Below are positions 17,101 to 48,600 of a stretch of 64,000 bases of DNA, in pieces. Origin of the DNA: Macrostomum hystrix (lineage: Eukaryota; Animalia; Platyhelminthes). Numbering within the stretch: position 1 is the first letter of the stretch; every line of letters begins with the position of its first letter. The stretch spans positions 3,286,001 through 3,350,000 of the forward strand of contig CATNEN010000002.1 of the NCBI GenBank assembly GCA_950097015.1. Direction: 5' to 3'. A program made the translations under genes and the position numbers. The notes under the pieces were generated by a model. It had not been told where the DNA came from. It did not search any database and saw only the letters and a program-made list of their open reading frames with translations.

Positions 17101-20100
17101 AAAACTAAAGAAGAAAAAGGCAACAGGAGTTGACGGAATAACAAACGAGCACACGATAAATTAGAAACACATTTCAAAGACCTGAATTTACTATCAGCTA
17201 ATCAAATAGGAAACAGAAAAGATTGCCGGACTTCTGATAACATCGCAGCCCTATTGACATTAATTCATAAAAAGAAGAAAATGAAAAGACCTTTCCATTT
17301 AGTTTTCTTTGATTTAAAAGCGCCTTTGACCACCCAACCCTAGTCACGCGATTAAAGCAGTTGGGCGTGAACCCAGCAATAATAATTATCATTGAGAGTA
17401 TGTACTCAAGCGCGAAATTTCACCTCAAGGTGTCAGAAAGCACAGCTACTGAGACGTTTTAAATTACTAATGGCGTCAGGCAAGAATGACCCTATCTCCA
17501 CTGCTATTCTCCCTATACATCGACCCGCTAAGCAGAATTCTATCAAACTCATTTCAAAGCCATACCTCCATATTGAATGAAGAAGTAAACAACTTGCTTT
17601 ATTGTGACGATTTAGTCATTTTTGGTGTAGACCTGACAGAATTACAAAAAGGCCTCGACGAAGTAGCCGATTTTTGCAATACTCATAAATTAGAAATAAA
17701 CATTGAGAAGACAAAGCTTCTGAGCTTCAATCTCCAATCTCCATCTCAATCTCCATCTCAATCTCCATCTCAATCTCCATCTCAATCTCCATCTCAATCT
17801 CCATCTCAATCTCCATCTCAATCTCCATCTCAATCTCCATCTCAATCTCCATCTCAATCTCCATCTCAATCTCCATCTCAATCTCCATCTCAATCTCCAT
17901 CTCAATCTCCAACACAATCGAGCGTAGACAGTTTTTACATGGTCAACTGGTTGAACCCGTACAGCAGTGGTAATATCTTGGGTTTCACATGAACGTGAAG
18001 GAAATAATAGATGCTCATTCCATAGAACTAGGCAAAAAATGGATATCCAATAATGCTTATGAGAAAGTTAGCGGGATTTCAGAGAGTAAAACACAAACAG
18101 CTCATCTTGTTTAGCACAACTTGATTGAATGCATAGTTCTCTATGCATAAGAGGCCTGGGGAGCTTTTGTCTTCTGAAAACTGGGTACTTGGGATGGGAA
18201 CCTTAGAGAGAACTAATTTTAGAATCTGCAAGTCGATTCTGCAAGTTAGTCCAAACACTGACAGCAATGGTGCTCGGTCCGAATTAGGAAGACTACCACT
18301 GTTATATAGTATTCAAAAAAGAAGCCTTCAATACTGGTCCTCAGTTCGGAGCCGACCAGACTCCATCATCGCGAAATTGGAGGCAGATACAGAATACAGC
18401 GATGTTGGCATTGGGGAAAAATGAGTAGTGAAGTAATGCGGAATTGTCAACAGACTAGAAAAACAGTCCATCAAAACGCACAGGGAGAACTTGAGTCGGA
18501 GTTCCGAGGGCACTGGACTCAGAGGATGGGAAAAGCAGCCAAGCTCAGCCACTTCTTCTACACGTTTAAGAAAGATTTCTCTAGAGAAAAGTACCTAACA
18601 ATAATCTCTAACCCAGAACAAAAGCGCACAATGTCCCGATTTCGTCTAGGAAACCACAAACTGGCCTGTGAGATATTGCGCACTGTAAGACCGGAAATCG
18701 CCTATGAAAACAGAACATGTCCAAAATGTAGAGTCGAGGTAGAGAACGAAACTCATATTCTCTTTAGTCCGTTGGTCCATTGGTCGGCTTATGTTCCAAT
18801 TAGAAATAAAACACAATAGCTATTCTCCTTTCGGGAGCAAAGTGATTTCAGTCACAGTTTTAATTTTATCTTTAAATTTAAATATTTCATTTTTAATGCC
18901 TTTGTTTACAAATTAAAAATATTTATTCACCTAAAACTGATCTTATGCATGCTAGTGTTTTTCTATCGCCGTTTTTATCGAATCGTTCAGCCTTGTTACC
19001 AACATCAAATAAACAAAAAAATCAGCACCCAATCGGAGCGCGCGCTTCAATAATAATAATAATAATATATTGTCTTATAATATATTATTATTATTAACGT
19101 CGTCAATAACTGGCGGCGAATCGAACGTCGTCAATCTTGTACAAAATAATTTCAATACTTCAAGATCCAGAACACTTACAACCACGCCAGGAACGGTAGT
19201 AGCATTCTTCCCCCAAACATCCCACCAGATCTTGGCTGGCGGCACAGCGTTTTCATCGTAGCAATAGAACCACTGACGCCCGCCATTGATGAAAGTCCCC
19301 TCCGCCATGATGCATTTCGGTACGGGCGGCTTCTCTGAAGGTGGAAATTGAAACGAAGAGTGCCTAGAACAAAGACTACATGCAACTTGTTGGTGCAAAC
19401 TAGTCCAAAGGCTTGACCGTGACCTCATTAAGGCTTCAAAAATGCCTTGCCCAAGGCCACATATTGTTTTTCTTTCGGCTGAATTTCGAACTCCAAACCT
19501 CATAGTAAGAAGTTCGAAGCTCTAACCATTGAGCTAAAGCCACTAGCTCCAAAGTTACCCCTAGCTCCATCTCATAAGCTTTCTTTCCAATTCAGGCCTG
19601 GTACCTTCAACTGCAGTGATAAAGACGTTGTATTCCATGACCTTGGAGAACTGCGACTCGCGGCCAGGTTGAAAAAAGGTGTGGCAACGGCAATAGTACA
19701 TGCCAGAGCTGTCGTGCTTCGCGCCGGTGATGTTCAAAGTCGGCTGAGTCTCCGAGTACAATGGGATCATCTTGGGCCGAGTGCGTCCGAGCAACTGCCG
19801 GGCACTTTTCAGCGGCGTGTACACCCAGGAATAGCGATGACATGGCAGCCCGTCGTCATCCAGATTGTTGCTGCTAGGCAAGCATGATAAGTTGACGCCT
19901 GCACCCTCTTTTAGATAGATGTTTCTGGTGCCTGCGAGTTTTGGCAAGACTTCAATGTCCGCTTTCTTCGAGTCAAAATTAGACACCGCTATTGTTGACT
20001 CTGGCTGACGCTGGCAGCTGAATGTGCCCCAGTGCTCCACGCCCAGCGGGTTCAGTACAAGATCGTCGCCATCGCGAGACACTCCAGGCGGTAGCAAGTC

Positions 20101-23100
20101 TGCCTCAGTCTCGTCCATCGAGCTGTAGCGCTGCTTGTTCTGCGCGCCCAGAGGATTCCCCAGCGATACCGCTGAGTTTGCGTTGGCCGGCGTGAACTTC
20201 CAGTGGATGGGAATGCTGACCTCGTTTGGACTGCGGACGATCTTATTGCACTTGAGGCGCATCGCACTGCCCACAGGCTGCTCCACCTTGCTGGTTGGTG
20301 ACGTCAGTTCCCAGTTGAAGGGCTGCCCTGTGTGTGGGAGACAACAGAAATACTAAATCCAATGAAAGCAGGTCTATTGGCGATATAATCAAGACATGTG
20401 AAGTGGGTGCTCAGATTTGAAATGGTGGAGTACGACGACATAATCGCCAAAGAATCATAGCCAGGAGGGTCAGGTTTAGGAGAGGAACAGGGTGCCTTAT
20501 GCATTCAACCTTTTTTAGTTAAAAAGACCTCCGGGTACTGAAGTATTTCAAATACAGAATAATATTTTTTCTGCATCTCTAAAGATATGAACAACCAATT
20601 ACAATGAAAACACAGAACGCTAAAATTTTCTGTTCATTCCAATAAACAACTTGAAAAATAAAAAATCATCGGCATCAGCGAGATATTCAACGATTCTCGT
20701 CGGGGTGTATGCTGGCAAAAACCACCAACACCTGTAAAATTTTTCTGCAAAGAAAATTTCACCATATGCCATGCATTCATGCATTCAAATTAAACTGTCT
20801 AATTAGCACACTTACGTGGCTTAAGAATGATCGGCATTCTTCGACTAACAGTGACATTGTTGACCATGTCGCTGACGTGGCATGTCCAATAGCCGGTGTC
20901 ATTGTCATTATTCATGTCGTGGACGACTGTGTCCGTAAAATTGGCGCCGTTGGCCTGCTGCTTGATGGCTTCGAAGCGCTCCGAAAGACGCCCAGTAGGG
21001 AACGGGAGCCGTGTCAAAGTGGCCCTGAACTGGGCCGGTCGCGACGGCTGCATTGTGGAGTGGACGGTTGTGGATTATTGTTAAGTTTCTTAAGTTTTAA
21101 TGTCATTTAGAGAAGAGCGACGAACCTCCTTGGCCACAACTGAGCACTTTAGAGTGGTGGTGTCGGGGTCCTTGGGATCGCTTCGCAGCACCACCCTCTT
21201 CACCGAGCTGCTTTGCACCGTCAGGTTTGAAAATGCCACTGCGGACCCGGATCGTCTGTTGAAGCCTTCGCATCTGTACCGACCACTGTCTGACGGGCTG
21301 GCGTCCTTGATCACAAGGCGGGTCGACTTCTCATCGCGCACCTGGTAGATTCGGGACGTATCTGCCAAACGACGTCCATCAGAGTCCTGCCACTCCAGCA
21401 GCCAGGCGGTGCCGTTGTAGCCGGGTTTTTGTCGCCTGACCAGGCAAGTCAGCACCACTGTACGACCGGACGGCACATTCAGGGTCTCTGGCTCCACGGT
21501 TGGAACCACGTCTGTGAATGCATCGGCCACGGAGTTGACAGTTATGGTACACAATATGCTGATCCCGGGATATTACACACAGTATAAGATCCTTAGATAT
21601 GAACTGCTTTGAATCTGGTTCACTTTATTCAGCTTTTAAAACTTTGGATTTACACTGAACTAGTTGATTTTGTGAACCACTTATATTTTTCTTGTCTGAG
21701 AAGTAGCGTAGTCATGCAGAGAAAAATTTTGCAACAAAAATTGACAACTGTTTTTCTGCTATCAGTTTCTAGATCCAGACTAGCTAGATAAAACCTGCAT
21801 GTGATGCTGCAAATTCCCATCATAGCATGGTCTAGCCTTAGTCAGCAGTGGCTCTTATTTGACCAATTTTAATATGAGCCGATCAGCTCGGCTATAAACA
21901 GCACCCATATAGGCAAAACCAGTGCACTTGATATCGCTATTATATACTTAGCACATTGAACTCGGCCATTCGATTTGAATGGAAATAGTTAGGTTAAATG
22001 TAAATGGAATGGAAACAAAGCTATTCGTTAGCTTACACTCTTCACAATCGGGTCGCTGTCCTCTTGGTCGGCCCACAATCTTGTCTGCATAGCCTTCCTC
22101 GCAGCTGAAATCGTTGAACAAGGAGAGCAAGCAGTACATGTACCATGCATGAATGAATGCTTGTTTCCTATGTAGAACTTTCGCTTTTCGAATGTGAAAT
22201 CTTATCTAACCACGACTCGGCAAGCGACTATTAGACTCTGCTGAGGTACTGAGTTTTTTACCTGATTTTCCTCCTAGACTCTTAAAAATAACGAACCATG
22301 TAATTTTATTGCTATTTTATCTTCTGTCTGAATTGAACTGGAATTTGGTCTTACGTGTCACAACCCGGAGAGTTCCTGTAGCCTTCTAGGCAGGGAACAC
22401 ACTTCCACCTGTTCACAGTTGAGTTGTAGTCCACAATCTTGTGGAAATCTCCGGTTGTCTTGCAGTCCTGACGATGAAATTGTTAAGTCTTGATGTAAAA
22501 CATTTTTGAATTACGGTTTGCTGCCAAACCATTTGGTGATATCAGCTTTAATTTGAGTTTATCTTATTCCACTGTTTAGTTACATCGGTCTTGCTTGCAA
22601 TCAACATGGACTTCGCTTGTGACTACTTGATGCTAAAACAAATTCATGGTACTTCACAATTTCAGATGCGGAGATAAAAATTGTGTCGCAGGTTCACATG
22701 TCTTATTGAATGCTAAACAATATCTAGTTGCTATCGAGGATCCGACGAAGATGTTTGGGTTAAATCTGTTTGCGCAGAAAATCTATTTGCGCAATATTTC
22801 AGGGGCCAGCTTGCTGCCCGGGCCACCGCCTGCCGCAAGCAGCTGCTTTTAAAACCTGAAAATGCGCCCAGCATCTAACATCTAACGCTCTTCTACAGAT
22901 CCTACGAAGATGTTTAGGTTAATTTTGTTTGCGCAGAAAATCTATTTGCGCAATATTTCAGGGGCAAGGTTGCTGCTCGGGCCACCGCCTGCCGCCAGAT
23001 CCTACGAAGATGTTTAGGTTAATTTTGTTTGCGCAGAAAATCTATTTGCGCAATATTTCAGGGGCCAGGTTGCTGCTCGGGCCACCGCCTGCCGCCAGAT

Positions 23101-30545: not shown

Positions 30546-31060
30546 ACAAAACAGTATTTAGTACAGCCCTGCAAGGCAATAAATGCCTTTAAGCCGAATG
30601 AAAAAATTACCGCAGGAAAACCATGTTCCATATTTGAGATTGCAGATGTTTGCTAGCAATCGGCATGTACAAATGCTTAAGTATTATGGCAAGAATGGCA
30701 ACGCCATATAATGATTCCGAAAATGCTTATTCTCAGAATCTGCAGTGTGGGAAAAGGCTGTGGAACGAATTAGCTTAATAATGCAACTTTGCTTTAGGAC
30801 CACATCAGTTCTTTTATTTGAGCCAAAAAATGATATATTGTGTTGTTTTACTTATTAGTATGAATAAAATGTAAACTTTGAGCAATTCTATTCTTGTCCA
30901 AAGGATGGAGAATCAGGGAAACTGTTATTTTTGGGGACAGTTACGATTCTAGCAGCCATGGGGAGCTTGTAGCTGCAAGGATAAATCTGTGCATTTACGA
31001 AGGTTTTCACTCTGTAAACCAATGGTACCCTTCTGATAAATCATACTAACCCTCCATAAC

Positions 31061-31319
31061 TCATGCTACCCCTCGATATATCATGCTACCCCTCGATATA
31101 TCATGCTACCCCTCGATATATCATGCTACCCCTCGATATATCATGCTAACCCTCGATATATCATGCTACCCCTCGATATATCATGCTAACCCTCGATATA
31201 TCATGCTACCCCTCGATATATCATGCTACCCCTCGATATATCATGCTACCCCTCGATATATCATGCTAACCCTCGATATATCATGCTACCCCTCGATATA
31301 TCATGCTACCCCTCGATAA
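31061..31319. repeat. 20-bp minisatellite, about 13 units
   Basis: tcatgcta(c/a)ccctcgatata units; only about 2 units in the duplicate at 63821. Confidence 0.95.
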
Positions 31320-31331
31320 TTTGCAGTCCAC

Positions 31332-34300
31332 TTAAAGAATTTGTGCTACCACATCGATAGATAATGCTGCTTCCCGATAAATCATGCTACTTCTCGATAG
31401 TAAATTACGCTTTGAGAGATGGTTCACTGAGCTGGCCTCAGGCTTTGAAGTATGATTCACTGAGCTGGCCTCAGGCTTTGAAGTATGGTTTACTGAGCTG
31501 GCTCTAAGCTTTGAATGATGGTTCACTGAGCTGGCTCTAAGCTTTAAAGTATGGTTCACTGAGCTGGCCTCAGGCTTTGAATGATGGTTCACTGAGCTGG
31601 CTCTAAGCTTTGAATGATGGTTCACTGAGCTGGCCTCAGGCTTTGAAGGATGGTTCACTGAGCTGGCTCTAAGCTTTGAATGATGGTTCACTGAGCTGGC
31701 CTCAGGCTTTGAAGGATGGTTCACTGAGCTGGCTCTAAGCTTTGAAGGATGGTTCACTGAGCTGGCTCTAAGCTTTGAATGATGGTTCACTGAGCTGGCC
31801 TCAGGCTTTGAAGGATGGTTCACTGAGCTGGCTCTAAGCTTTAAAGTATGGTTCACTGAGCTGGCCTCAGGCTTTGAAGTATGGTTCACTGAGCTGGCTC
31901 TAAGCTTTGAATGATGGTTCACTGAGCTGGCTCTAAGCTTTGAAGGATGGTTCACTGAGCTGGCTCTAAGCTTTGAAGGATGGTTTACTGAGCTGACCTC
32001 AGGCTTTGAATGATGGTTCACTGAGCTGGCGTCAGGCTTTGAAGGATGGTTCACTGAGCTGGCTCTAAGCTTTGAAGGATGGTTCACTGAGCTGGCCTCA
32101 GGCTTTGAAAGATGGTTCACTGAGCTGGCCTCAGGCTTTGAAGTATGGTTCACTGAGCTGGCTCTAAGCTTTGAAGTATGGTTCACTGAGCTGGCTCTAA
32201 GCTTTGAAAGATGGTTCACTGAGCTGGCTCTAAGCTTTGAAGGATGGTTCACTGAGCTGGCTCTAAGCTTTGAAGGATGGTTCACTGAGCTGGCTCTAAG
32301 CTTTGAATGATGGTTCACTGAGCTGGCTCTAAGCTTTGAATGATGGTTCACTGAGCTGGCTCTAAGCTTTGAATGATGGTTCACTGAGCTGGCTCTAAGC
32401 TTTGAAGGATGGTTCACTGAGCTGGCTCTAAGCTTTGAAGGATGGTTCACTGAGCTGGCTCTAAGCTTTGAATGATGGTTCACTGAGCTGGCTCTAAGCT
32501 TTGAATGATGGTTCACTGAGCTGGCTCTAAGCTTTGAAGGATGGTTCACTGAGCTGGCTCTAAGCTTTGAAGGATGGTTCACTGAGCTGGCTCTAAGCTT
32601 TGAAGGATGGTTCACTGAGCTGGCTCTAAGCTTTGAAGGATGGTTCACTGAGCTGGCTCTAAGCTTTGAAGGATGGTTCACTGAGCTGGCTCCAGGCTTT
32701 GAATGATGGTTCACTGAGCTGGCTCTAAGCTTTGAAGGATGGTTCACTGAGCTGGCTCTAAGCTTTGAATGATGGTTCACTGAGCTGGCTCTAAGCTTTG
32801 AAGGATGGTTCACTGAGCTGGCTCTAAGCTTTGAAGGATGGTTCACTGAGCTGGCCTCAGGCTTTGAATGATGGTTCACTGAGCTGGCGTCAGGCTTTGA
32901 AGGATGGTTTACTGAGCTGGCTCTAAGCTTTGAAGGATGGTTTACTGAGCTGGCTCTAAGCTTTGAAGGATGGTTCACTGAGCTGGCTCTAAGCTTTGAA
33001 GGATGGTTCACTGAGCTGGCTCTAAGCTTTGAAGGATGGTTCACTGAGCTGGCTCTAAGCTTTGAAGGATGGTTCACTGAGCTGGCTCTAAGCTTTGAAG
33101 GATGGTTCACTGAGCTGGCTCTAAGCTTTGAAGGATGGTTCACTGAGCTGGCTCTAAGCTTTGAAGGATGGTTCACTGAGCTGGCTCTAAGCTTTGAAGG
33201 ATGATGCCTTGAACTAGCCAATGGCTTTGAGAAACGGGGCATGGATTTGTCCACAGTCTTTAAGGGATGGTTCCCTGCACTCGCCTCACGCTTAAACGAC
33301 TCTTTCATCCTGCTGGCTCCAGGCTTTGAAGTTGGATGTTGATGTTGGACAATAGAAGTCTGTGGCTTTGTTGAAAAAGTGATGCGTTTTGTTTGCGCAC
33401 GTGTCGGCAAATTAAAAGCACGTTCTTTTTCGCGATTCCTTCGATTGATTGGTAAGTGAGCATTCTTATTCTCTGAAAGGTGGTTCAACTTTTCTCTCAC
33501 CCATTGAATGTTCTGTTCATCGTTCGTCTTCATGACAACGCGTCTCTCGTCCCTGATGGTCTCAATCTGCTGCAGACAAAACTGCATGTGTAAGCGCTGG
33601 TCGCTGTAGTGAGCCAGAGTGAGCAGTTCCTCCAGGTCCGGGTCGTCTAGCAGCTCTGACAGCCACGCATCAAAGTCGATGCCTTCAGCAGTGCGGAGCC
33701 GCTCAGCTTGCAGGCTCCAGATCAGGCAGCGGAAGTTCACGTACAGGTGAGATGCGCGAGGATGCGACAGTCTGGCTGTGAGCAAAGTCCGCGTGAACTC
33801 GGGAATGAACGGAAAGCTCGGTGGAGTGTCGGCTGGGAGGCAGAACCTCCACGCCCAGTCCGAGTCAGTGCGATCGAAGTCTCGGTGTTTGATCTCAGCC
33901 GGCTCCCAGCCTCTCTTGACTTTGTGATGCAGCAGAGCCATCAGGTGCGCATCGGCTTTTCCGCAGCGATGGAACTTCAAATGCGCCATGACGGTCAAGC
34001 AGACGGCTGCGCACTTGCACCAGGGCAGCCCACGGATGAGCTCGATCTGCTTCATCAAGGCTTCTTCGTCACAAAAGTCTGATTGCAGCTCAGTCAGACA
34101 ATGGTACACAATGCTATACACATCTAGGCACTTCTGTGAGAATTCAATACATCCATCTCGGACTTGGGAAGCCAAGGGCGGCTGCGTCAGCGTTAGCAGA
34201 GTAAACAGGTGGAAATAAAATTTCTTAGACTTCAACGGTTTTAACTGGCTCATCATAAATTTCAACACTACACCACTGTCGTCTCTCAGCTCACTCAGTC

Positions 34301-36260
34301 GGTCTCGCACCTTCCGCTTCGTGTTTTCGAACTCTCCTCCGATTCCAGCGTTCTTAAAGTAGATCGGAGCGTCAGGCATGAAGAAGTGCGGCATGCACTC
34401 ATCGGGCGAGCTGCTGGAGTCGATGAAGCTCAGCATCATGTCGAGGGACTCCTCCAGCAGAGCCACCAGATTCTTTGGCTGCCACGCTTCGTTTGCGTCG
34501 CCGAGGTGCTTCTCTAGCATGAAGAAGAGCAGAGTCTTGGCATGGTAGGTCTTGAGTCCAGGCGTTGCCAGGAAGAGAGGCAAATGTCTCTTAAAGATGT
34601 ACTTGATCAGTACAAATAGCTGGCCTTGAACTGTACTCAGACTTCGCATGATCTTCTTCTCATGAAAGCTGAAGCTGACCCTGAGCTCGTTTCTCTGATT
34701 CGGCCTTGTTGCTCGGACCAGGTGGACGAATATGAGTGGGCATTCGGGCAGCAGTGTCTTCGTCCTGAGAAGGCAGAGTCCGCTGCAGCACTGAATCGCT
34801 TGGCAGATGTCTAGTGAGGGCCGGGAGCCACTGGCAGGAGTTGACACTGCAGGCTGGCTGCCTGAATTATTAGCCATTGTGGCGAGACTTTCAATGTTTA
34901 GTTTAACTGTCTATTAGCTGTCAATCATGGACCAACTCAAAAGGAAAAATTTACCAACTAATCTGCGAGCTTCCCCCGCATGGAGAGGTAGAGAGTAGTT
35001 TGCTTGTAGGTTGGGTAATTTGTGAACTCTGGCCCACACAGAGCTGACTAAGTGTTTGAATAATGCTATAGATTGTATCTTAATTTTCTCCTTCGTAAGG
35101 AGGCTGTATTTGCTAGTCGTCGCTTCCAAAACGAAAGTTCTAATCGAAATCTGAATATCATTGTGCAGCCTCAATTGGAGGTCTCATCAGACTCACCAGA
35201 TCCGACTGGCACAATGGCGTGGCCTTGTATAACCTTCAGCCTGACGGCATCGTAACAGCTGATCTCGCTCCGTCCGTTGCAGCCGCCATCCAGATGAAAT
35301 CGCTGTCTTGCTTCTAGCACAGTCCAGTCAATGTCGGAGTCTGCCGCGGTCCTGCCGTTCACCTGCTGCAGGTTGTTGGCCCAGCCCTCCGCGAAGCTGC
35401 CCGTGATCTGTCTGTCATCCTGAGCCAGGACTCGATCGACTCCTTCCACACTGTCAGCCAGGTGCTGGAGACAGAGGGCCCGCTCCTCAGTGAATCCTGA
35501 CTCGCTGAGCAGCGGAGACAGATCGATAACTGGCCTTTGTTCCAATTTTGGAGGGGACCTGCACTTAACAAAAAGGCAAGATTTTTTGTGATACAATTCA
35601 GGCATTGCTTTTGCGTTAACTCGACAAAGTTACTTGCGGTTTGATCAGTCATTTGTAGTTAGTTTAAGTAAAAAACTGTCATATATACATTTTTACACTG
35701 TCTCTCTGCGCAAATTACCTCTGTAATCACAGCTAAGCCAGCTATATTTTATGTACATGCGCTCGTACCTGAGAATCATGCAATGCTCTCGACAAGCTGT
35801 GGACTCGCGAATTTCATTTGGCTCATCTCGCTGACCCAACTTGGCTCCTCGGTCTGTGAGAGCCTTGGAGGCTCTGGCGTGACCCGCTGTGCGAGCTCGC
35901 AACAATGCCGTCCGACCTAGGTCGTCCTCAGCATCCACTGACGCACCGACGTCCAGCAGCTGCTCGATGAGCTCATGGTGTCCTTCGTCGGCTGCCAGCA
36001 TGAGCGCTGTGGACCCGCTGCTGTCTCGCAGGTCGATGTTTTCGCAGCTGAGTTTTCCACAGTCGATCAGAGTTGCAGCCAGTGCGACGTGGCCGTGTCT
36101 GATGGAGAGGCGGAGCAGCTGTGCCACCTGAGCTGGCTGCATCTGAGCCAGAGTGCAATCCAGGATTGAGTTGTCCCCAGAGGCGGTTAGGTGCGAGAGC
36201 AAGGCGAGCAGGGGAGAGTCCTTCGTGAGCCAGTCCGGAGGAATGGCTTCGACTTTATCG
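31332..36260 (-). CDS. Ankyrin-repeat plus Mab-21/cGAS-like (cGLR-type) nucleotidyltransferase with a long C-terminal repeat
   Basis: Exons about 36260-35769 (ANK: GSTALMLAADEGHHELIEQLLDVGASVDAED..GRTAL), 35558-35197 (GSFAEG..DSDID) and 34861-31332 (SLDIC, LRVSFSFHEK, LKTYHAKTLLFFMLE, MPHFFMP). GT-AG junctions with matching phases. The 5' end is unresolved. Confidence 0.85.
31421..33205 (-). repeat. 33-bp coding tandem repeat (SSVNHPSKLRA)n, about 54 units
   Basis: Uninterrupted reading frame through the array, with LRA/PEA/PDA and HP/HH/HT variants. Confidence 0.95.
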
Positions 36261-36261
36261 C

Positions 36262-37590
36262 TTAACTAGCATTTGAGTTTTCGTATGGTTCTTTTACCAT
36301 TGCTTTTAGGATTTCTTCAAGTTTTAGCACGTTTATTTCTTTTGCGGCATGCTTTACAGATTCATGCCAGATTTTTCGTTTCAAATCATTGTCGCTGATC
36401 GTCGAAACCAAGAGATTCAAGGCATTTAAACCAAATTCGCTTGATGCCTTTGAATTAAAATTCGTTAGAATGCGATCTTGAATTCTTTGGTCAGACACCA
36501 GATTAAAAAAGTAATTAAGGCATGCACCATTTTGTTCAAATGTCGCTCGGGTAGCATACTTCAGACAAAGTTCATCGCGGATCTTTTGATTTGAAATTTC
36601 CTGCACCATAAATTTTACTTTGTCCCAATTTCGTTCTGTCGCTGCTAATTCTGCAGCCTTTTTGCAGCAAGAATCTTTCTTTGCTGTGTCGGTAATGTTG
36701 CTAAGAAGGTAGGCTATTAATCTGAGTGGAGCAGTGGTGTTAGAAACAAGTTGAGAACAGAATTCATTTCTTTGCTCTACGTCGGTCATAGTTTGCAAAT
36801 ACATTGCTGCATTTTTTATTTTTTTATTTTCTGATACCACTCGTTCTTGGGCTTCGACTCTACGAGTTTCGGTCGAAATTAGAAGAGGTGCGTACTGTTC
36901 TGTACAAACCTTGAGTGCTCGAATATTTTCGTACTGAAAATCACAACGGCCTGCCGGCATCAGTGTTAGATTCGCATCCATGGCTGAGTTACAAACAGTG
37001 ATTTTATTCTCAGAGAAGCAGTTGTCGAGAGCGCTAGCTGAATCATTCTTGTCATAGCCGTCATGCTCGGGCGGCTTTGGTGTGTATATTATATCATCGT
37101 ATTCGTTTTCGCTGTTGACAGGCAGGGCGGAATCCGGAGAATCGGTAATTTCATCGTACTCAGAATCTCCATGCATTTCTGCACAATTATAGCTCGCTTC
37201 TCCGATATCCTCGCGCGTGAAAGGATGCGCTTGCCGAAGGCCTGGGACTAATAGTAAAGGCATGTGATCGCACACTTGATAATTCGATGTATTCGTACTC
37301 GACATTGTCACACCATTCACATTTAACGATAGGTCGCGAATCACAGGTATATTTCTATTGACCATCTCAAATGAAATTTCTGTTTCAGAATTTTTTATTG
37401 TGCTCTTTAAGTACTCTAGAACATTGGATCGACGGTTTGTTGCTGCAGAGTCAGCAGCAAGTCTATAGACCGTTATGCGTATTTTTCTGCTTCGTATGCG
37501 GCTAACTTTGCGCTGAAGTCTACTGACGTCTCCAGCCGCTGCTGCATCTTCGATTCTCTTTAAATCCTTAATAGTTAGTGTATTTCCCAT
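36262..37590 (-). CDS. Uncharacterised ORF of about 440 aa, probably the 5' exon of the ANK-Mab-21 gene
   Basis: Long open frame from MGNTLT with degenerate helical/ANK-like repeats; stops within a few nt of the ANK frame, on the same strand. Confidence 0.6.
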   Translation of the reverse strand: MGNTLTIKDLKRIEDAAAAGDVSRLQRKVSRIRSRKIRITVYRLAADSAATNRRSNVLEYLKSTIKNSETEISFEMVNRNIPVIRDLSLNVNGVTMSSTNTSNYQVCDHMPLLLVPGLRQAHPFTREDIGEASYNCAEMHGDSEYDEITDSPDSALPVNSENEYDDIIYTPKPPEHDGYDKNDSASALDNCFSENKITVCNSAMDANLTLMPAGRCDFQYENIRALKVCTEQYAPLLISTETRRVEAQERVVSENKKIKNAAMYLQTMTDVEQRNEFCSQLVSNTTAPLRLIAYLLSNITDTAKKDSCCKKAAELAATERNWDKVKFMVQEISNQKIRDELCLKYATRATFEQNGACLNYFFNLVSDQRIQDRILTNFNSKASSEFGLNALNLLVSTISDNDLKRKIWHESVKHAAKEINVLKLEEILKAMVKEPYENSNAS

Positions 37591-42660: not shown

Positions 42661-45600
42661 TCAGAGTCGACTCTTAAGCCGAAGTGCAGACAAACGTGCT
42701 CTCTCCGCGTTCCAGGTGCTCGTAAATTCCGCCTTGCCGAGAGAGTTCTCAGCAGAGCACACGTAGGTGCCATACGCGTTGTCGCGGCCGATGTTCTCTG
42801 CAGTTGAGAAGGTTTCAAGCAATGAAAATTTGTTAGTCAAAATTCAGTGTCTCACTACAGCCAATGCCTTCTGACTAGCTTTCCTTAGAATATCTGGCTT
42901 AGATAAATGAATTCTAGTGTCAATATTGAATTTGTGCTTGCTAGGCGATTCTATTTCTTCGCGGAAATTCCATGGACTGCCCATAGTATTTTTAGCACAC
43001 GGGAAAACCACTTTACGTGATGCCTTCAGCCAATGGGAAAACAGGAATCATTTTCTCTATTCCCATGTCCCAATTTGTAAATGCGAATTTGATCATTCGG
43101 TGGAAAATAGTCAAATTATATTTTAGAAAATAATTATACAGTTTTTTACTTTTGATAATTTTAACAGTCTCATAAGCTATATTTTGGCTTCTCTTTAGAG
43201 TTTTTTATCACAAATACTTCGGGTGTGTCATAAGTAATGTCACTGAGGGTAAAACAGACCAACTAACAATCGCAGATGAACGAAACTGTATCAATCAACA
43301 ACATAGTGTCCCCCAATATCAATCACCCTCTGGCAGTACTCGTACAGCTTCTCAACCTTGTCTTGATTTCTTATGCTACAAATTGAGTCCTCGCAGTAAG
43401 AGCCCGTTCATACGGCAGTGAGCCAATTCAGGCCGAGAGTTAAAATATATTTAAGTTTAACAGAGCGATAAGGAAGGGGGGTTGGCGGTACGATAACAAG
43501 AGTGCGCGACTGAGGGTAGGAGAGGAGGCTAGAACGTGAGCGGCGGACCAATCAGAGAGGAGGAAAGAAAGAAAGGATAGAGAATGAGAGATCAGCCGCA
43601 GAGATAACGAGAGAGAAAGAACTAGATTGAACTGGACGATGTAAACAAGAAAAGTGCAGAGAACGAAAGAGTGAATAGAGGACAGAAGGCAGAGACGAAA
43701 GTCGCGACAACCTCAGCCTGCAGGTGTTTTTCCTCCAGCTGTCGGAACCAGTGCAACGCGGCTTCTTTGACCTCATCATGGTTTGCGAAACTTCTCTGGG
43801 AAAAGTCTGCCTTCAGCCATTTAAAGAGAAACCTGTCGCACAAGTTGAAGTCTGGGCTGTAGGGACTCTGCCAGAGCAGATTTACTCGCCGTCCAGCCAG
43901 AAAATCCGAAACAGCCTGACAGGTGTGGGGCCGTGCGTTGTCCATCTGCCACAGAACTTCGTTCAGGTGAATCGGGTTTGACCGGAGCGTGCGCCAGAGG
44001 TTCCCAGTGTGTCGGACAAAGTCGATGAAGTACTGGCCATCGACCTTGGTGTTTGGCGGATTTGTACAGATGGAGACTCGTTTGTTTGGCGTGAATGCCA
44101 CCAGCAGCATGGTCTTCTTGTCTGAGATGGACCTCCTGGTCACAGTCAGCCTGGAGTCCCCAGCTCCCAGCCAGCAGCGATTGTCTGCCTTGCTGCTTTT
44201 GCCATCCAGGTGGAGCCAGGTCTCATCCTCAACAACCAGGCAGTTCAGGATGTCATCCAAGCCCCGGCTGCTGAACACCTTGCGGATCTGATTGGCGCAG
44301 TTCACACGGGCCTGACGTTGGTCCGCAGTGAGGTCATGGGGCACCCAGACCGAGCAGACGTTTCGGAGATGGAGATCCTCTGTCAAGATGCGATGGACTG
44401 TCTTGAAATCAATCTCCAAGCAGTCCGCTAGCTCCCTGACAGACTGCCGCGGGTCTTCCTTGACCAGGTCGCTGATGACTTCGATGTTCTCTATTGTCCT
44501 GGTTGAACATGGTCGTCCAGATCTGGCGGCATCTCCCAATTCGAACCCAGGATGAGTAAAGTTCTGAAACCACCTGTAAATTGTCCTGCGAGTTGGGCAG
44601 TTGTCTGGCAGTGTGTTCCGGAGATCCTCCTCTACTTCAGATTTTCCAAGCTTGAAGCGAATGAAAGCGTAGAACTGGATGTGCGTCTTGTCGTGATTCA
44701 TGTTGAGTTTTGCTCGTTGCAAAAAGAAGATTTCATCGCGTTGCGCTTGCTAAATCTGATTAACAAATTCTTGCGACAGTTTTGGCCATAGACATTAAAA
44801 TTGCTGCTCAGGTGTGGTGGCGACTTCTCAATAAATGTACTTTCAGAATATAATATATTTGGATGATTATTGCTTTGGGTTCCCGCACAACAACCACAGT
44901 GACATTACTTATGACACACCCGTAGTATCTAACCAATAATAATAATTAAAATTATTTTATTAAGGCTATTAAGGCCTTATCCTCTTAATGCTGCGTCGAC
45001 CGTTCGGCGCCACACCACCCTCAATTACCCCACGTAATGCTGGTACCATGTAACAAATGTATGAACTGAAACAATTTAGAGAGCAGTGTATTGCTAAAAA
45101 ACATAAATTGTTCACTATTAGAGTCGGGAATCGAACTTCCGACCTTTAAGTCGAGAGCTTCACGCTCTAATCACAAAGCTTCAACCACACGCGCTGATTG
45201 GTTGAACCAATCAATCTAGATAAAACGAGTAACAAGTTCACAAACCTATCTACCAGCTGTGTTACTTCCTTATCGCTCCTTTCCGATTGAGCAAGCGAGT
45301 TCATGTTCTTTCCTTACCTTTTGGTAGTCTGAAATGGAAGGGGTGTTAGAATAGCCTTTAGGATCTGTTTGTGTACTTCAATTCATTAAACCACAATGCT
45401 TCTAAATCTAAACACTCACTTGTAAACTAGCTGCGACCCGTATGTGTTGGAGCTCGAATTGCTGTAGTAGGCCTCCTCAAACTGCCTGATCCACCTTGGG
45501 GTCTCCAGTTGAACATTGTCCGCGTCGCGCCTGGTAATATCCAGATCCGGGTACGGGTAGCCGGTAACGATGCATTTTAATTCCAAGTCACCGGTGCCCG

Positions 45601-48600
45601 TCTTCGAGATGAACATCCTGCCGTTCATCCCCGAATCGTCGCCTTCGCCAGGTCGGGCTAAGGGGTCGAGGTTTAACGTACGTTAGCCCGACTAACGCAC
45701 TTAGAGATGTCAACTTAAGACTCCAGAATGGAGACCTATGGTCAATCATCGAACCAAATCAACTGAAATCAGCAGCTGGTCGATCCAGTTGACCAGAGTA
45801 TCCCCAGGGTACCCTGAAATAAAGCGAACCCTAATACTGAGCGAAACCCATTTCCCTGACTCCTGAGCACACAGTACACAGATAAAGTACACAGACCCTG
45901 ATTTCAGGTAAAGTACTATCTTACTGCACCTTTAAGCTGGCCCTAAAGCGTGCCAATTGTACAGCAAAACCCTTAAACCTTCTCGCTGCGGCTGCGCCCC
46001 AAGTTAGTGTGGGCATGCCGCGAGTTCGAGCAGGAATCTTGGTGCTCTGAGAAACTAAGACCGCTCTGCCACTCACCCCCTTCTAACAAACATTGACCGA
46101 GCTACTAAGTTAGAAAATGTTACAGGAACGGAATCTTCAACAACGGCCTTGAAGGTGTCTCTCATAATGCAATCTTGAAGCTTACTACGCTATAACTGAA
46201 CCTAATCCGAATTAGCTTTCACAACTTTCAGCAGAATCATGTTGCGCGAAAAGCTCTTACTTTGCACGAAAGCCTTGATGGGCACCGACTGAATAAACAG
46301 ATCTTCATCGCCCGATACGTTGATGAATGACCTGACACCCACGCACATGAAAATGCCCGAATCGCTCACGGAGCCAGTCTGCAGCGTCAGGGTCGCCTTG
46401 CCGCCCTCCAAACGCTTTTTCATGCCGGAAACCTCGGTGGCAGTGCCGGCTTCCCTCTCATCGTAAAGGCACTTGAAGTTCTTGCACTTTTGTGAGTGTG
46501 TGTGTAATTGGATGCTTGCAAAAATATTCCAAATAGAACGGCTATTTACAGGGCTCTCCAGTGTAACCTACCTTGACCCAGTCCAGGTAGCGATATGCGT
46601 CTGAATTTCTATCCACTTCTCCATCGTAGTTCTGCAGAGTGCAGGTCAGCTCAATCGGTGGTCCATCGCGGCGCAAATCGACGATGTCCGGATTTCGAAT
46701 GATCAATGAAGAGTCCACGATGTCCTTCATTGTGACGACGATGTTGGGCCTCTCGGGAATCGCTAGAGAAAACGATGGTGTGAGAACATTATCTTAGTGG
46801 AAGGCTGGTGGGACTCCTTCTAAACCGGCCGATCTCTTTCTGTACGGACTCACAGACTGATTCTCTGACTCACTGCTTTGGTCTCTTCACTCACAAATAT
46901 TTAGTAGGCCTGTGCTTAGAGATTCAGGCACTAATCTGGGGGTCGGGAGTTTGCCAAACCTCAGCCAAGAAGAAACGATCTGTATTCCCGATTCGCAGCC
47001 AACGGAGAGACAATTCAGCACATTTCGCTGACTTCTGAACATGCACAGGTACATGGATACTGTATTCTGGCACAAACTCACAGGTGATCGTATCTGCCTT
47101 GAAGTTTCTTCAGGCAGTGTACACTCTCAATGTACCTTGGGGTTCGGCTCTCAAGGGCATAAATGGCACGACAAGCCCCGAAGCCTCGGAATCGGGCTCA
47201 GGGACAGGGATCAGAACAAAGACTACATGCAACTTGTTGGTGCCAACCAGTCCAAAGGCTTGACCGTGACCTCTTTAAGGCTTCAAAAATGCCTTGCCCA
47301 AGGCCACATATTGTTTTTCTTTCGGCTGAATTTCGAACTCCAAACCTCATAGTAAGAAGTTCGAAGCTCGAACCATTGAGCTACAGCCACTAGCTCCAAA
47401 GTTACCCCTAGCTCCATCTCATAAGCTTTCTTTCCAATTCAGGCCTGGTACCTTCGACTGCAGTGATAAAGACGTTGTATTCCATGACCTTGGAGAACTG
47501 CGCCTCGCGGCCAGGTTGAAAAAAGGTGTGGCAACGGCAATAGTACATGCCAGAGCTGTCGTGCTTCGCGCCGGTGATGTTCAAAGTCGGCTGAGTCTCC
47601 GAGTACAATGGGATCATCTTGGGCCGAGTGCGTCCGAGCAACTGTCGGGCACTTTTCAGCGGCGTGTACACCCAGGAATAGCGATGACATGGCAGCCCGT
47701 CGTCATCCAGATTGTTGCTGCTAGGCAAGCATGATAAGTTGACGCCTTCACCCTCTTTTAGATAGATGTTTCTGGTGCCTGCGAGTTTTGGCAAGACTTC
47801 AATGTCCGCTTTCTTCGAGTTAAAATTAGACACCGCTATTGTTGACTCTGGCTGACGCTGGCAGCTGAATGTGCCCCAGTGCTCCACGCCCAGCGGGTTC
47901 AGTACAAGATCGTCGCCATCGCGAGACACTCCAGGCGGTAGCAAGTCTGCCTCAGTCTCGTCCATCGAGCTGTAGCGCTGCTTGTTCTGCGCGCCCAGAG
48001 GATTCCCCAGCGATACCGCTGACTTTGCGTTGGCCGGCGTGAACTTCCAGTCGATGGGAATGCTGACCTCGTTTGGACTGCGGACGATCTTATTGCACTT
48101 GAGGCGCATCGCACTGCCCACAGGCTGCTCCACCTTGCTGGTTGGTGACGTCAGTTCCCAGTTGAAGGGCTGCCCTGTATGTGGGAGACAACAGAAATAC
48201 TAAATCCAATGAAAGCAGGTCTATTGGCGATATAATCAAGACATGTGAAGTGGGTGCTCAGATTTGAAATGGTGGAGTACGACGACATAATCGCCAAAGA
48301 ATCATAGCCAGGAGGGTCAGGTTTAGGAGAGGAACAGGGTGCCTTATGCATTCAACCTTTTTTAGTTAAAAAGACCTCCGGGTACTGAAGTATTTCAAAT
48401 ACAGAATAATATTTTTTCTGCATCTCTAAAGATATGAACAACCAATTACAATGAAAACACAGAACGCTAAAATTTTCTGTTCATTCCAATAAACAACTTG
48501 AAAAATAAAAAAACATCGGCATCAGCGAGATATTCAACGATTCTCGTCGGGGTGTATGCTGGCAAAAACCACCAACACCTGTAAAATTTTTCTGCAAAGA

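What the first reader, a model, noticed from the sequence alone, without database searches (positions are those of the whole stretch)
31332..36260. Ankyrin-fused cGAS-like receptor with intact catalytic residues inside the Ig array
The spliced model gives ANK repeats, then a Mab-21/cGAS fold with GS (GSFAEG), DxD (DSDID) and a third Asp (SLDIC), plus the typical RVSFS..EK, LKTYHAK and PHFF helices. Animal cGLRs are established nucleic-acid sensors that make cyclic dinucleotides. The ANK sensor arm, long basic tail and position between diversifying secreted Ig genes suggest a possible innate-immune gene cluster in an invertebrate. The functional link is inference.
Basis: partly seen in the sequence, partly recalled or inferred. 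Interest (0 to 1): 0.75.

Follow-up and report, generated by a model that had tools for sequence, protein, structure and literature searches.

The report
Flatworm ankyrin-fused cGAS-like receptor gene
This is a real gene of the flatworm Macrostomum hystrix that joins ankyrin repeats to a cGAS-like signalling enzyme with its catalytic residues intact, but it is one copy of a gene family of well over a hundred copies that was already catalogued in a sister species in 2023, so it is a new member of a known kind.

Summary
On the minus strand, three open exons with canonical GT/AG junctions encode ankyrin repeats, a nucleotidyltransferase lobe (GS, D-I-D), then the third Asp, a Mab-21_C lobe, a family-specific helical extension and a very basic tail.

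The genome is Macrostomum hystrix. It holds at least 144 matches to the catalytic exon. GS and both Asp are invariant in 27 diverse paralogs, and the exon B/C intron position is conserved.

A 62%-identical M. lignano relative folds like cGAS (Z 19.6) and oyster Cv-cGLR1 (Z 19.2).

Li et al. 2023 already list this family as cGLRs, cloned five M. lignano members, and name ankyrin-cGLR as a known architecture. None of the five is marked among their 15 active enzymes.

Earlier notes of this scan describe two other copies of the family on other DNA of this genome.

New points:
- The gene probably extends 5' to 37590, across a stop and frameshift that only an unverified 50-nt intron would bridge.
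- The copy is a mosaic sharing a 2.8-kb block with a broken copy.
- The tail is a 33-bp x 54 repeat found nowhere else in the genome.
- Ig genes do flank it.
- A family of at least 12 STING-like ORFs offers a candidate receptor.

Nucleic-acid sensing and any link to the Ig genes remain unsupported.

The parts
36265..37590 (-). Probable first coding exon (442 aa). It starts MGNTLT.. (Met-Gly, a possible N-myristoylation site), continues with an acidic region unique in the genome, and ends in four or five degenerate 33-residue ANK-like helical repeats.
   Evidence: Open frame. Its repeats match the N-terminal repeat arrays that sit directly upstream of the ANK exon in paralogs. In paralogs L016, L017 and L019 this part is continuous with the ANK exon in one ORF. 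No Pfam hit.
36248..36297 (-). Break between the N-terminal exon and the ANK exon: a TAA stop at 36264-36262 plus a frame shift. A 50-nt GTAAAA..GAAG interval (36297-36248) would splice phase 0 to phase 0 and give ..ILKAM|AIPPDWL... This intron is inferred and not verified.
   Evidence: Read from the sequence. The 94-96% DNA block shared with the C2:2.459 Mb copy ends at 36251, so the break coincides with a mosaic boundary.
35769..36253 (-). ANK-repeat exon (exon A), ending in the donor AG|GT at 35768.
   Evidence: Pfam Ank_2 3.6e-12, Ank 1.6e-10. 59% identical to M. lignano P0001 and 95% to paralog L016.
35197..35558 (-). Exon B, the N-lobe of the nucleotidyltransferase: spine helix, GS activation-loop motif (35401-35396) and catalytic D-I-D (35335-35327).
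   Evidence: G53, S54, D75 and D77 are invariant in 27 paralogs of 30-63% identity. There are 144 genome matches. In the P0001 model GS directly follows the first strand and D-I-D opens the second.
34305..34861 (-). First part of exon C: third catalytic Asp (34811-34809, 60 residues after D-I-D), then the Mab-21 C-lobe (RVSFSxxEK, GLKTYHAK, MPHFF).
   Evidence: Pfam Mab-21_C 25.6 bits against a cut-off of 24.1. The paralog profile hits 40 PDB chains, all cGAS, cGLR1 or MAB21L1, best E 1.2e-8. The third Asp is kept in all sampled paralogs that cover it, except L043 and L048.
33450..34304 (-). Family-specific, mostly helical C-terminal extension of about 285 aa (FYFHxF, DWAWRF, LYVNFRC and DLEELLTLA motifs).
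   Evidence: Conserved in 43 paralogs. No Pfam or PDB sequence relative. In the P0001 model the equivalent region scores mostly pLDDT 80-95. Its fold was not searched on its own.
31335..33449 (-). Basic tail (705 aa, pI 12.0). It includes a 33-bp x 54.4 in-frame tandem repeat (31409-33203, unit LRASSVNHPSK). The stop codon is at 31334-31332.
   Evidence: All 41 genome matches to the repeat unit lie inside this array, and the pre-repeat tail is also unique in the genome. Paralogs and M. lignano relatives end soon after the extension.
8218..21554 (-). Context: Ig-domain gene copy 1, downstream of the cGLR gene in its direction of transcription.
   Evidence: tblastn of the M. lignano Ig protein P0025. 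Pfam Ig_3 and I-set hits above cut-off at 21093-21554.
42685..48133 (-). Context: Ig-domain gene copy 2, upstream of the cGLR gene, interrupted by a mariner-type transposase at 43622-44722.

Best explanation
The locus is a multi-exon gene of Macrostomum hystrix for an ankyrin-fused cGAS-like receptor (cGLR). It is one copy of a Macrostomum-specific radiation of well over 100 genes.

The protein is built, from N to C terminus, as follows:
- probably an N-terminal arm that starts Met-Gly and carries ANK-like repeats;
- canonical ANK repeats;
- a flexible linker;
- a cGAS-fold nucleotidyltransferase with an intact GS loop and D-I-D...D triad;
- a Mab-21 C-lobe;
- a family-specific helical extension;
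- in this copy only, a long basic tail made of a repeat.

Most likely mechanism, by analogy with characterised cGLRs: the repeat arm, the extension, or both bind a still unknown ligand, more probably a protein than a nucleic acid. This switches on synthesis of a cyclic di- or oligonucleotide, which is read by the STING-like proteins that this genome encodes in at least 12 copies.

Shown: exon structure, domain content, the cGAS fold in a 62%-identical relative, conservation of the active site across the family, purifying selection on the shared block, and the presence of STING-like ORFs.

Inferred: transcription and splicing of this copy, enzymatic activity, the product, the ligand, coupling to STING, and an immune role.
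For: - Exons and motifs.
- Conserved phase-1 intron: donor in 32 of 36 paralogs, acceptor in 36 of 36.
- M. lignano ANK+Mab-21_C proteins are 56-63% identical, and their sequence runs continuously across the predicted exon B/C junction.
- AF2 model of P0001 (pLDDT 79, pTM 0.70). Residues 179-494 match mouse cGAS at Z 19.6 (rmsd 3.5, 263 aligned) and Cv-cGLR1 (8gjw) at Z 19.2.
- In that model GS and D-I-D flank the first two strands, and the third Asp lies on strand 306-314.
- G53, S54, D75 and D77 are invariant in 27 paralogs whose mean column identity is 37%.
- The exon C profile hits only cGAS, cGLR1 or MAB21L1 chains, best E 1.2e-8.
- dN/dS against the closest copy is 0.31 over 463 codons of exon C.
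- Li et al. 2023 list M. lignano members of this subfamily (PAA93208.1, PAA68676.1) as cGLRs and name ANK-cGLR as a known architecture.
- STING-like ORFs: Pfam STING_LBD 25.6 bits over 143 of 182 positions. All PDB profile hits are STING. All listed top Foldseek hits are STING (E 1e-7, TM 0.52-0.59). At least 12 copies.
Against:
- A stop and a frameshift separate the N-terminal exon from the ANK exon.
- The copy is a mosaic, and its partner has a 1-nt gap in exon C.
- Neither Pfam PF03281 nor a PDB profile search detects exon B by sequence. The N-lobe assignment therefore rests on motifs, on 59% identity to P0001, and on P0001's predicted fold.
- The spliced protein of the window itself was neither folded nor searched.
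- The five M. lignano cGLRs screened by Li et al. have a blank 'Note' field, so they are not among the 15 named active enzymes.
- The STING-like model has low confidence (pLDDT 57.5), and its Pfam score is below the cut-off (27).
Confidence: 0.6

Rival explanations
1. This is a decaying or non-functional mosaic copy. A 2.8-kb block (ANK exon to residue ~465 of exon C) was copied between two loci on contig C2. Here it sits behind an unrelated N-terminal exon with a stop and frameshift at the junction, and its 3' end has been overrun by a minisatellite. The long ORF would then be a recent relic, not a working gene.
For: - The shared block (94-96% DNA identity) ends at 36251, right at the frame break, and at 33469. 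The flanks are unrelated.
- The N-terminal exon has no close paralog; the best match is 35% identity over the repeats.
- The two other copies of this sub-lineage are broken: C2:2.459 Mb has a 1-nt gap and TGA stops, and C2:3.62 Mb is a fragment with stops.
- The tail repeat is unique to this locus and is followed by a second minisatellite.
Against: - About 745 codons of exons A to C are open with intact splice sites and intact catalytic residues.
- dN/dS is 0.31-0.43 for exons A and C.
- A phase-compatible 50-nt GT..AG interval, or a downstream start (spliced-leader trans-splicing is reported for about 20% of genes in this species), could rescue expression.
- The repeat array keeps the reading frame for about 600 codons.
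Confidence: 0.2
2. This is a nucleic-acid sensor. dsRNA or dsDNA would bind the catalytic domain, the basic tail, or both, much as the basic disordered end of human cGAS does, and so activate cyclic-dinucleotide synthesis.
For: - Characterised cGLRs commonly sense dsDNA or dsRNA (PMC9980059).
- The tail has pI 12.0, with 117 K+R in 705 aa.
Against: - The catalytic domain is about neutral: exon B has 11 K+R against 18 D+E, and the exon C core has 22 against 16. Li et al. report pI above 8.5 for nucleic-acid sensors.
- The tail is absent from all paralogs and M. lignano relatives examined.
- No Zn-thumb equivalent was identified.
- The M. lignano relatives screened with poly I:C and ISD45 are not noted as active.
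Confidence: 0.12
3. This is a non-enzymatic Mab-21-type scaffold. The protein would keep the fold but act as an adaptor, with ANK repeats and the extension as interaction platforms, as is suspected for MAB21L1/2.
For: - No activity has been reported for the family.
- Some family members have lost catalytic residues: L043 and L048 here, and the caspase-fused P0052 and P0053 in M. lignano.
Against: - GS and both Asp of D-I-D are invariant, and the third Asp nearly so, in paralogs down to 30% identity. A pure scaffold would not be expected to keep them.
- The MAB21L1/2/3 genes lack a predicted functional active site.
Confidence: 0.08

Closest known systems
Macrostomum lignano ANK-cGLRs catalogued by Li et al. 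2023 (PMC9980059, Table S3 nos. 92 and 93: PAA93208.1, PAA68676.1; here P0001 and about 60 further proteins)
   Same: - Same domain order: ANK-like repeats, ANK, cGAS-like NTase, Mab-21_C, helical extension.
- 56-63% identity over exon C.
- Identical motifs: TGS[YF]AEGWAN, DSDIDW, GSQPAV, RPxxD, LRVSFSF, GLKTYHAK, MPHFF.
   Different: - Different species (M. hystrix).
- This copy has a unique acidic N-terminal exon, a stop and frameshift before the ANK exon, and a 705-aa basic tail largely made of a repeat, which no relative has.
- It sits between Ig genes and not in a cGLR array.
Vertebrate cGAS and oyster Cv-cGLR1 (PDB 4o6a, 8gjw)
   Same: - Bilobed cGAS fold: Z 19.6 and 19.2 for the M. lignano relative.
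- GS activation-loop motif.
- [D/E]h[D/E] X50-90 [D/E] triad, here D-I-D X60 D.
- C-lobe motifs.
   Different: - About 14-20% identity.
- GS-to-DhD spacing of 20 residues, at the long end of the usual range.
- A shorter segment between D-I-D and the third Asp.
- No recognised Zn-thumb.
- A near-neutral core.
- Added ANK arm and C-terminal extension.
- Ligand and product unknown.
ANK-fused cGLRs of the coral Stylophora pistillata (Li et al. 2023, Fig. 4C)
   Same: An ankyrin repeat module is attached to a cGLR core, in a genome with expanded cGLR and STING repertoires.
   Different: Probably an independent fusion, in another phylum. Whether the two fusions share an origin was not tested.
MAB21L1/2 (PDB 5eog)
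   Same: Same fold and the Mab-21_C lobe (profile E 2.8e-4). The genome also has one canonical Mab-21 gene, on contig C24 (PF03281, 128.7 bits).
   Different: The MAB21L1/2/3 genes lack a predicted functional active site. This gene keeps one.

Membership tests
cGLR (criteria of Li et al. 2023) | Predicted structural homology to cGAS | tested here: met
   Tested on the M. lignano relative P0001, which is 59-63% identical to the window's exons. Residues 179-494 match mouse cGAS at Z 19.6, rmsd 3.5 over 263 aligned residues. The window's own joined protein was not folded.
cGLR (criteria of Li et al. 2023) | G[S/G] activation-loop motif | tested here: met
   T-G-S at 35404-35396. G53 and S54 are invariant in 27 paralogs.
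cGLR (criteria of Li et al. 2023) | [E/D]h[E/D] X50-90 [E/D] catalytic triad | tested here: met
   D75-I-D77, then 60 residues counted across the predicted exon B/C junction, then Asp at 34811-34809.
cGLR (criteria of Li et al. 2023) | Ligand-dependent synthesis of a nucleotide second messenger | not testable with these tools
   This needs biochemistry. Relatives cloned by Li et al. carry no 'active' note.
Pfam Mab-21 family | Mab-21_C (PF20266) at or above the gathering score | tested here: met
   25.6 bits against a cut-off of 24.1, residues 106-169 of the exon C ORF. The profile search against PDB gives E 1.2e-8 to cGAS.
Pfam Mab-21 family | Mab-21 NTase domain (PF03281) at or above the gathering score | tested here: not met
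   No hit for exon B at E up to 0.1. A genome-wide PF03281 search finds only the canonical Mab-21 gene on C24. The exon B profile has no PDB sequence hit. The N-lobe is too diverged for sequence models.
Ankyrin repeat proteins | Ank, Ank_2, Ank_3 and Ank_4 Pfam hits above cut-off | tested here: met
   Ank_2 47.1 bits (cut-off 27.3) and Ank 41.1 bits (cut-off 21.1).
STING (candidate receptor elsewhere in the genome, not in the window) | STING ligand-binding domain (PF15009) and fold | tested here: inconclusive
   Pfam 25.6 bits, below the cut-off of 27. The hmmscan of the shorter ORF gave nothing. The PDB profile hits are only STING, best E 1.1e-3. All listed top Foldseek hits are STING at E 1e-7, but the model's pLDDT is 57.5.

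The most novel reading that the evidence does not exclude
Macrostomum flatworms, in a phylum reported to have mostly lost cGLRs, would run a very large, diversifying cGLR-STING system. It would have more than 140 ANK-cGLR genes, whose N-terminal 33-residue repeat arrays range from a few repeats to open frames of 1,800 aa and act as variable ligand-recognition arms. These would be paired with a dozen or more STING-like receptors. The window copy, embedded between fast-evolving secreted Ig genes in an arrangement hinted at in M. lignano too, would mark a true mixed immune gene cluster.
Probability: 0.2. Interest if true: 0.6.

Novelty: new member of a known kind. Interest (0 to 1): 0.3.

Why it matters
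It confirms that at least one flatworm lineage keeps, and has greatly expanded, cGAS-like receptors. [quoted passage not shown]

It also shows that the active site is under constraint across the family, and that STING-like partners exist in the same genome.

Macrostomum has transgenesis available in M. lignano. That makes it a possible model for asking what non-nucleic-acid ligands ANK-fused cGLRs detect.

For this particular copy the value is modest. It is one mosaic member with an uncertain 5' junction and a tail peculiar to this locus.

Tried and rejected
- A profile of the full-length proteins (A1) against PDB was swamped by ankyrin hits and said nothing about the enzyme.
- Exon B alone (phmmer) and a 27-paralog exon B profile against PDB gave no significant hit.
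- Pfam PF03281 did not detect exon B.
- A profile of the C-terminal extension against PDB gave nothing significant (best E 0.33, an ABC transporter).
- The ESM Atlas gave only weak leads (0.83) to Mab-21_C clusters.
- The word search with the STING-like ORF returned nothing.
- No transmembrane-rich exon was seen within 1.5 kb upstream of the STING-like ORF.
- A search for an annotated M. hystrix protein, to check the gene model, found only M. lignano proteins.
- The big representative search was not run. The operators flagged it as costly, and the claim does not rest on an absence of relatives.
- The joined spliced protein of the window was never typed, searched or folded. All searches were done exon by exon, by reference, and the fold was tested on a database relative.
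- Rejected: reading D-S-D as the catalytic pair. Conservation (SDhD; the first Asp varies) and the strand position both point to D-I-D.
- Rejected: the tail as a genome-wide satellite insertion. The repeat occurs only here.
Full report
**Organism**

The window is G000:C2:3286001-3350000. G000 has 220,453,370 bases in 42 contigs, with contig lengths 35,345,953 (C38) and 13,505,968 (C7). These figures match the total length, contig count, longest contig and N50 given for the Macrostomum hystrix assembly in Table 1 of Wiberg et al. 2023 (PMC10468722).

**Observation**

The list of minus-strand ORFs and the sequence show three open exons.

- Exon A: open frame 36253-35769. It has ankyrin repeats (Pfam Ank_2 E 3.6e-12, Ank E 1.6e-10). 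It ends AG|GTACGA.
- Exon B: 35558-35197. It follows the acceptor ..GTGCAG| and is in phase with exon A (AG+G gives Arg). It carries ..ITGSFAEGWANNLQQVNGRTAADSDIDWTVL.. and ends ..GGATCTG|GTGAGT.
- Exon C: starts at 34861, after ..ATTCAG|. The phase is 1 (G+GC gives Gly). It reads SQPAVSTPASGSRPSLDICQAIQCCS.., then ELRVSFSFHEKKIM, GLKTYHAKTLLFFML and CMPHFFMPDAP. It stays open to the stop at 31334-31332.

Pfam finds Mab-21_C in exon C (25.6 bits, cut-off 24.1). phmmer against PDB finds only cGAS chains, weakly (E 0.05).

**Support for the splicing model**

The support is comparative.

- tblastn shows the same three-exon layout in four other loci of the genome.
- At the position homologous to the exon B/C junction, 32 of 36 paralogs have N|GT and 36 of 36 have AG|NN. 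Intron lengths range from 64 to 1438 nt.
- The predicted junction peptide ..PVGS-G-SQPAV.. matches the continuous ..VGAGSQPAV.. of annotated M. lignano proteins and of the constructs cloned by Li et al..

**Family**

- Exon C (residues 1-554) has at least 78 scored matches in the genome out of 198 candidates. Many lie in tandem arrays on contig C1, for example at 12.71-12.82 Mb.
- Exon B has 144 matches.
- In the protein database the relatives found are M. lignano proteins of 650-2000 aa carrying ANK and Mab-21_C domains, apart from one JGI metagenome protein, P0016.

Li et al. [quoted passage not shown] Their Table S3 lists five M. lignano proteins cloned for the biochemical screen. Numbers 92 (PAA93208.1) and 93 (PAA68676.1) carry exactly this subfamily's motifs..TGSYAEGWANSL.QVNGRTAADSDIDWTVL....GSQPA..RPAQDTC....LRVSF.FQEK...

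The 'Note' column of that table names the active enzymes. It is blank for all five M. lignano proteins. [quoted passage not shown]

So both the family and the architecture are published. Its activity, ligand and product are unknown.

Two earlier notes of this scan (s1-332673, s1-394534) reached the same conclusion for other copies in this genome.

**Fold**

I folded instead the M. lignano relative P0001, which is 59% identical to exons A and B and 63% to exon C.

- The model has mean pLDDT 79.4 and pTM 0.70.
- After the ankyrin matches, Foldseek's best hits are cGAS structures (E about 1e-6, TM 0.50-0.54 on the target).
- VIA-align gives mouse cGAS 4o6a at Z 19.6 (rmsd 3.5, 263 aligned, model 179-490 against chain 146-506) and oyster Cv-cGLR1 8gjw at Z 19.2.
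- In the model a long spine helix precedes strand 218-222, and GS (223-224) follows it directly.
- D245-I-D247 opens strand 246-259.
- The third Asp (D307) lies on strand 306-314. This is the canonical arrangement.
- The ANK domain (7-148) is joined to the enzyme by a low-confidence linker (148-171).

**Active-site conservation**

- In about 53 sampled paralogs, GS, SDhD and RPxxD are kept almost everywhere. The exceptions are L043 (ESNIDW, RPSES) and L048 (DSDVNW).
- In a 27-sequence exon B alignment with mean column identity 37%, the invariant columns include G53, S54, D75 and D77. The first Asp of DSDID varies, so the catalytic pair is D-I-D.
- The spacing is GS-X20-DID-X60-D, which is inside the published ranges.
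- A profile of the exon C head hits 40 PDB chains at E up to 0.01. All are cGAS, cGLR1 or MAB21L1, and the best E is 1.2e-8.
- Exon B is not recognised by Pfam PF03281 or by a PDB profile search. Its assignment therefore rests on motifs, on identity to P0001, and on P0001's predicted fold.

**What is particular to this copy**

(a) The 5' end.

- In paralogs the ANK exon is the end of a long first exon. That exon starts Met-Gly (MGNSIGK.., MGQKISF..) and holds a variable number of 33-residue ANK-like repeats.
- Some paralogs have open frames of 1,256 and 1,810 aa of such repeats.
- In the window the corresponding ORF (36265-37590, MGNTLT..) ends in TAA at 36264-36262 and is out of frame with the ANK exon.
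- A 50-nt GTAAAA..GAAG interval (36297-36248) would restore the frame, phase 0 to phase 0. That is only an inference.
- A downstream start is an alternative. Spliced-leader trans-splicing is reported for about 20% of genes in this species.

(b) The copy is a mosaic.

- Window 33469-34872 and 35089-36251 are 94-96% identical to C2:2.459 Mb (L016). The flanks are unrelated.
- The 5' boundary of the shared block coincides with the frame break.
- L016 has a continuous first exon but a 1-nt gap in exon C.
- A third copy of this sub-lineage, at C2:3.62 Mb, is a fragment with stops.
- dN/dS between the window and L016 is 0.43 for exon A, 0.86 for exon B (only 11 differences) and 0.31 for exon C (463 codons, dS 0.084). 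The block has therefore been under purifying selection in at least one lineage.

(c) The tail.

- After residue ~470 of exon C the protein continues for 705 aa with pI 12.0.
- Most of it is a 33-bp repeat of 54.4 copies (31409-33203, 93% matches) that encodes LRASSVNHPSK.
- All 41 genome matches to the unit, allowing up to 3 mismatches, lie inside this array. The 265-nt pre-repeat tail is also unique in the genome.
- Relatives end soon after the extension.
- Only one of the three minus-strand frames of the unit is open, and it is the one in frame with the gene. With few independent mutations in the array, the open frame is weak evidence for selection.

**Context**

- tblastn with the M. lignano Ig protein P0025 finds Ig exons at 8218-19332 and at 42685-46766, on the same strand as the gene.
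- Pfam confirms Ig domains at 21093-21554 (Ig_3 37.7 bits, I-set 34.9 bits). It gives weaker hits at 19564-20286 and 47411-48133.
- The C-terminal third of P0025 matches the cGLR extension (window 33477-33920, 55-71% identity). In M. lignano, then, an Ig gene and a cGLR fragment are close enough to have been merged into one gene model.
- That is a hint of conserved adjacency and no more. Most family members sit in arrays of their own kind.
- Transposons also lie in the interval: a mariner-type DDE_3 transposase at 43622-44722 and a LINE at 56506-60174.

**A candidate receptor**

- The genome search with Pfam STING_LBD gave a sub-threshold match at C2:9104529-9104996 (25.6 bits, cut-off 27, positions 3-145 of 182).
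- The open frame starts ..GEAFAWNFAFTFLRLILPKL...
- phmmer against PDB returns only STING chains, with E 0.06-1.
- A 10-paralog profile also returns only STING, best E 1.1e-3.
- An AF2 model is of low confidence (pLDDT 57.5). Even so, all of its listed top Foldseek hits are STING ligand-binding domains (E 1e-7 to 4e-6, TM 0.5-0.59).
- There are at least 12 such ORFs, most of them at C2:8.97-9.10 Mb.
- Earlier notes of this scan describe genes in that same interval as soluble double TIR-STING proteins.
- This gives the family a plausible reader for its product. Coupling between the two is inferred.

**Mechanism and rivals**

The best-supported reading is an ANK-fused cGLR that makes a nucleotide signal on binding an unknown ligand.

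A nucleic-acid ligand is not favoured, for three reasons:
- the catalytic domain is near charge-neutral, whereas Li et al. report pI above 8.5 for dsDNA and dsRNA sensors;
- the relatives screened with poly I:C and dsDNA carry no active note;
- the basic tail is a novelty of this one locus.

The main rival for this particular copy is that it is a mosaic on its way to decay.

**Verdict**

The gene is a new member of a known, published kind.

Noticed in passing
window 31022-31318: A second minisatellite (20 bp x 14.8 copies, 93% matches) starts 14 nt downstream of the gene's stop codon, so the 3' end of the gene lies in a tract prone to repeats.
   Followed up: no
L018 3603-5987 (G000:C1:367602-369986): A 795-aa open frame runs without a stop from exon C of one family member into the N-terminal repeats and ANK exon of the next tandem copy. 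This may be a double-cGLR protein of the OAS2/3 type, or simply a missing stop.
   Followed up: no
G000:C1:13854797-13858057 and C1:17374446-17375894: Open frames of 1,810 and 1,256 aa made of 33-residue ANK-like repeats lie upstream of family members. The length of the N-terminal repeat arm varies enormously between paralogs.
   Followed up: no
M. lignano proteins P0052 and P0053; M. hystrix L043 (G000:C1:3121935-3125023): Two M. lignano gene models join a caspase p20 domain to ANK and this cGLR-like domain. Their active sites are degenerate (DDCDINW or DDCDMNW, KPAES). The M. hystrix copy L043, about 45% identical to the window gene, shows similar losses (ESNIDW, RPSES). A kinase-fused model (P0031) also exists.
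   Followed up: partly
G000:C2:8967258-9105038, C39:4.23-4.25 Mb, C39:19.16 Mb, C38:7.50 Mb, C7:13.14 Mb: At least 12 ORFs have a STING-ligand-binding-domain-like sequence and predicted fold, most of them in one cluster on the same contig as the window.
   Followed up: partly
G000:C2:3619256-3620496: A third, fragmentary copy of the window gene's sub-lineage (87-93% identical pieces of exons B and C, with stop codons) lies about 300 kb from the window.
   Followed up: no
window 35198-35557 and 34290-34859 (alignments A4, A5): Conserved Cys and His positions: H88 nearly invariant and C93 invariant in exon B (..FHLxGxC..C..), and a CC pair after the third Asp in exon C. Together they might form a metal site that replaces the cGAS Zn-thumb.
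   Followed up: no
protein P0016 (JGI metagenome contig of 3,238 nt): This is the only non-M. lignano database hit, 50% identical and carrying Mab-21_C. Relatives of the family therefore occur in environmental samples, presumably from other macrostomid worms.
   Followed up: no
window 56506-60174 (+) and 43622-44722 (-): A LINE ORF with endonuclease and reverse transcriptase domains lies in a 65% GC stretch. A mariner/Tc1-type DDE_3 transposase sits inside Ig gene copy 2.
   Followed up: partly
G000:C24:4853213-4853761: The genome has one canonical Mab-21 gene (PF03281, 128.7 bits), distinct from the expanded ANK-cGLR family.
   Followed up: no
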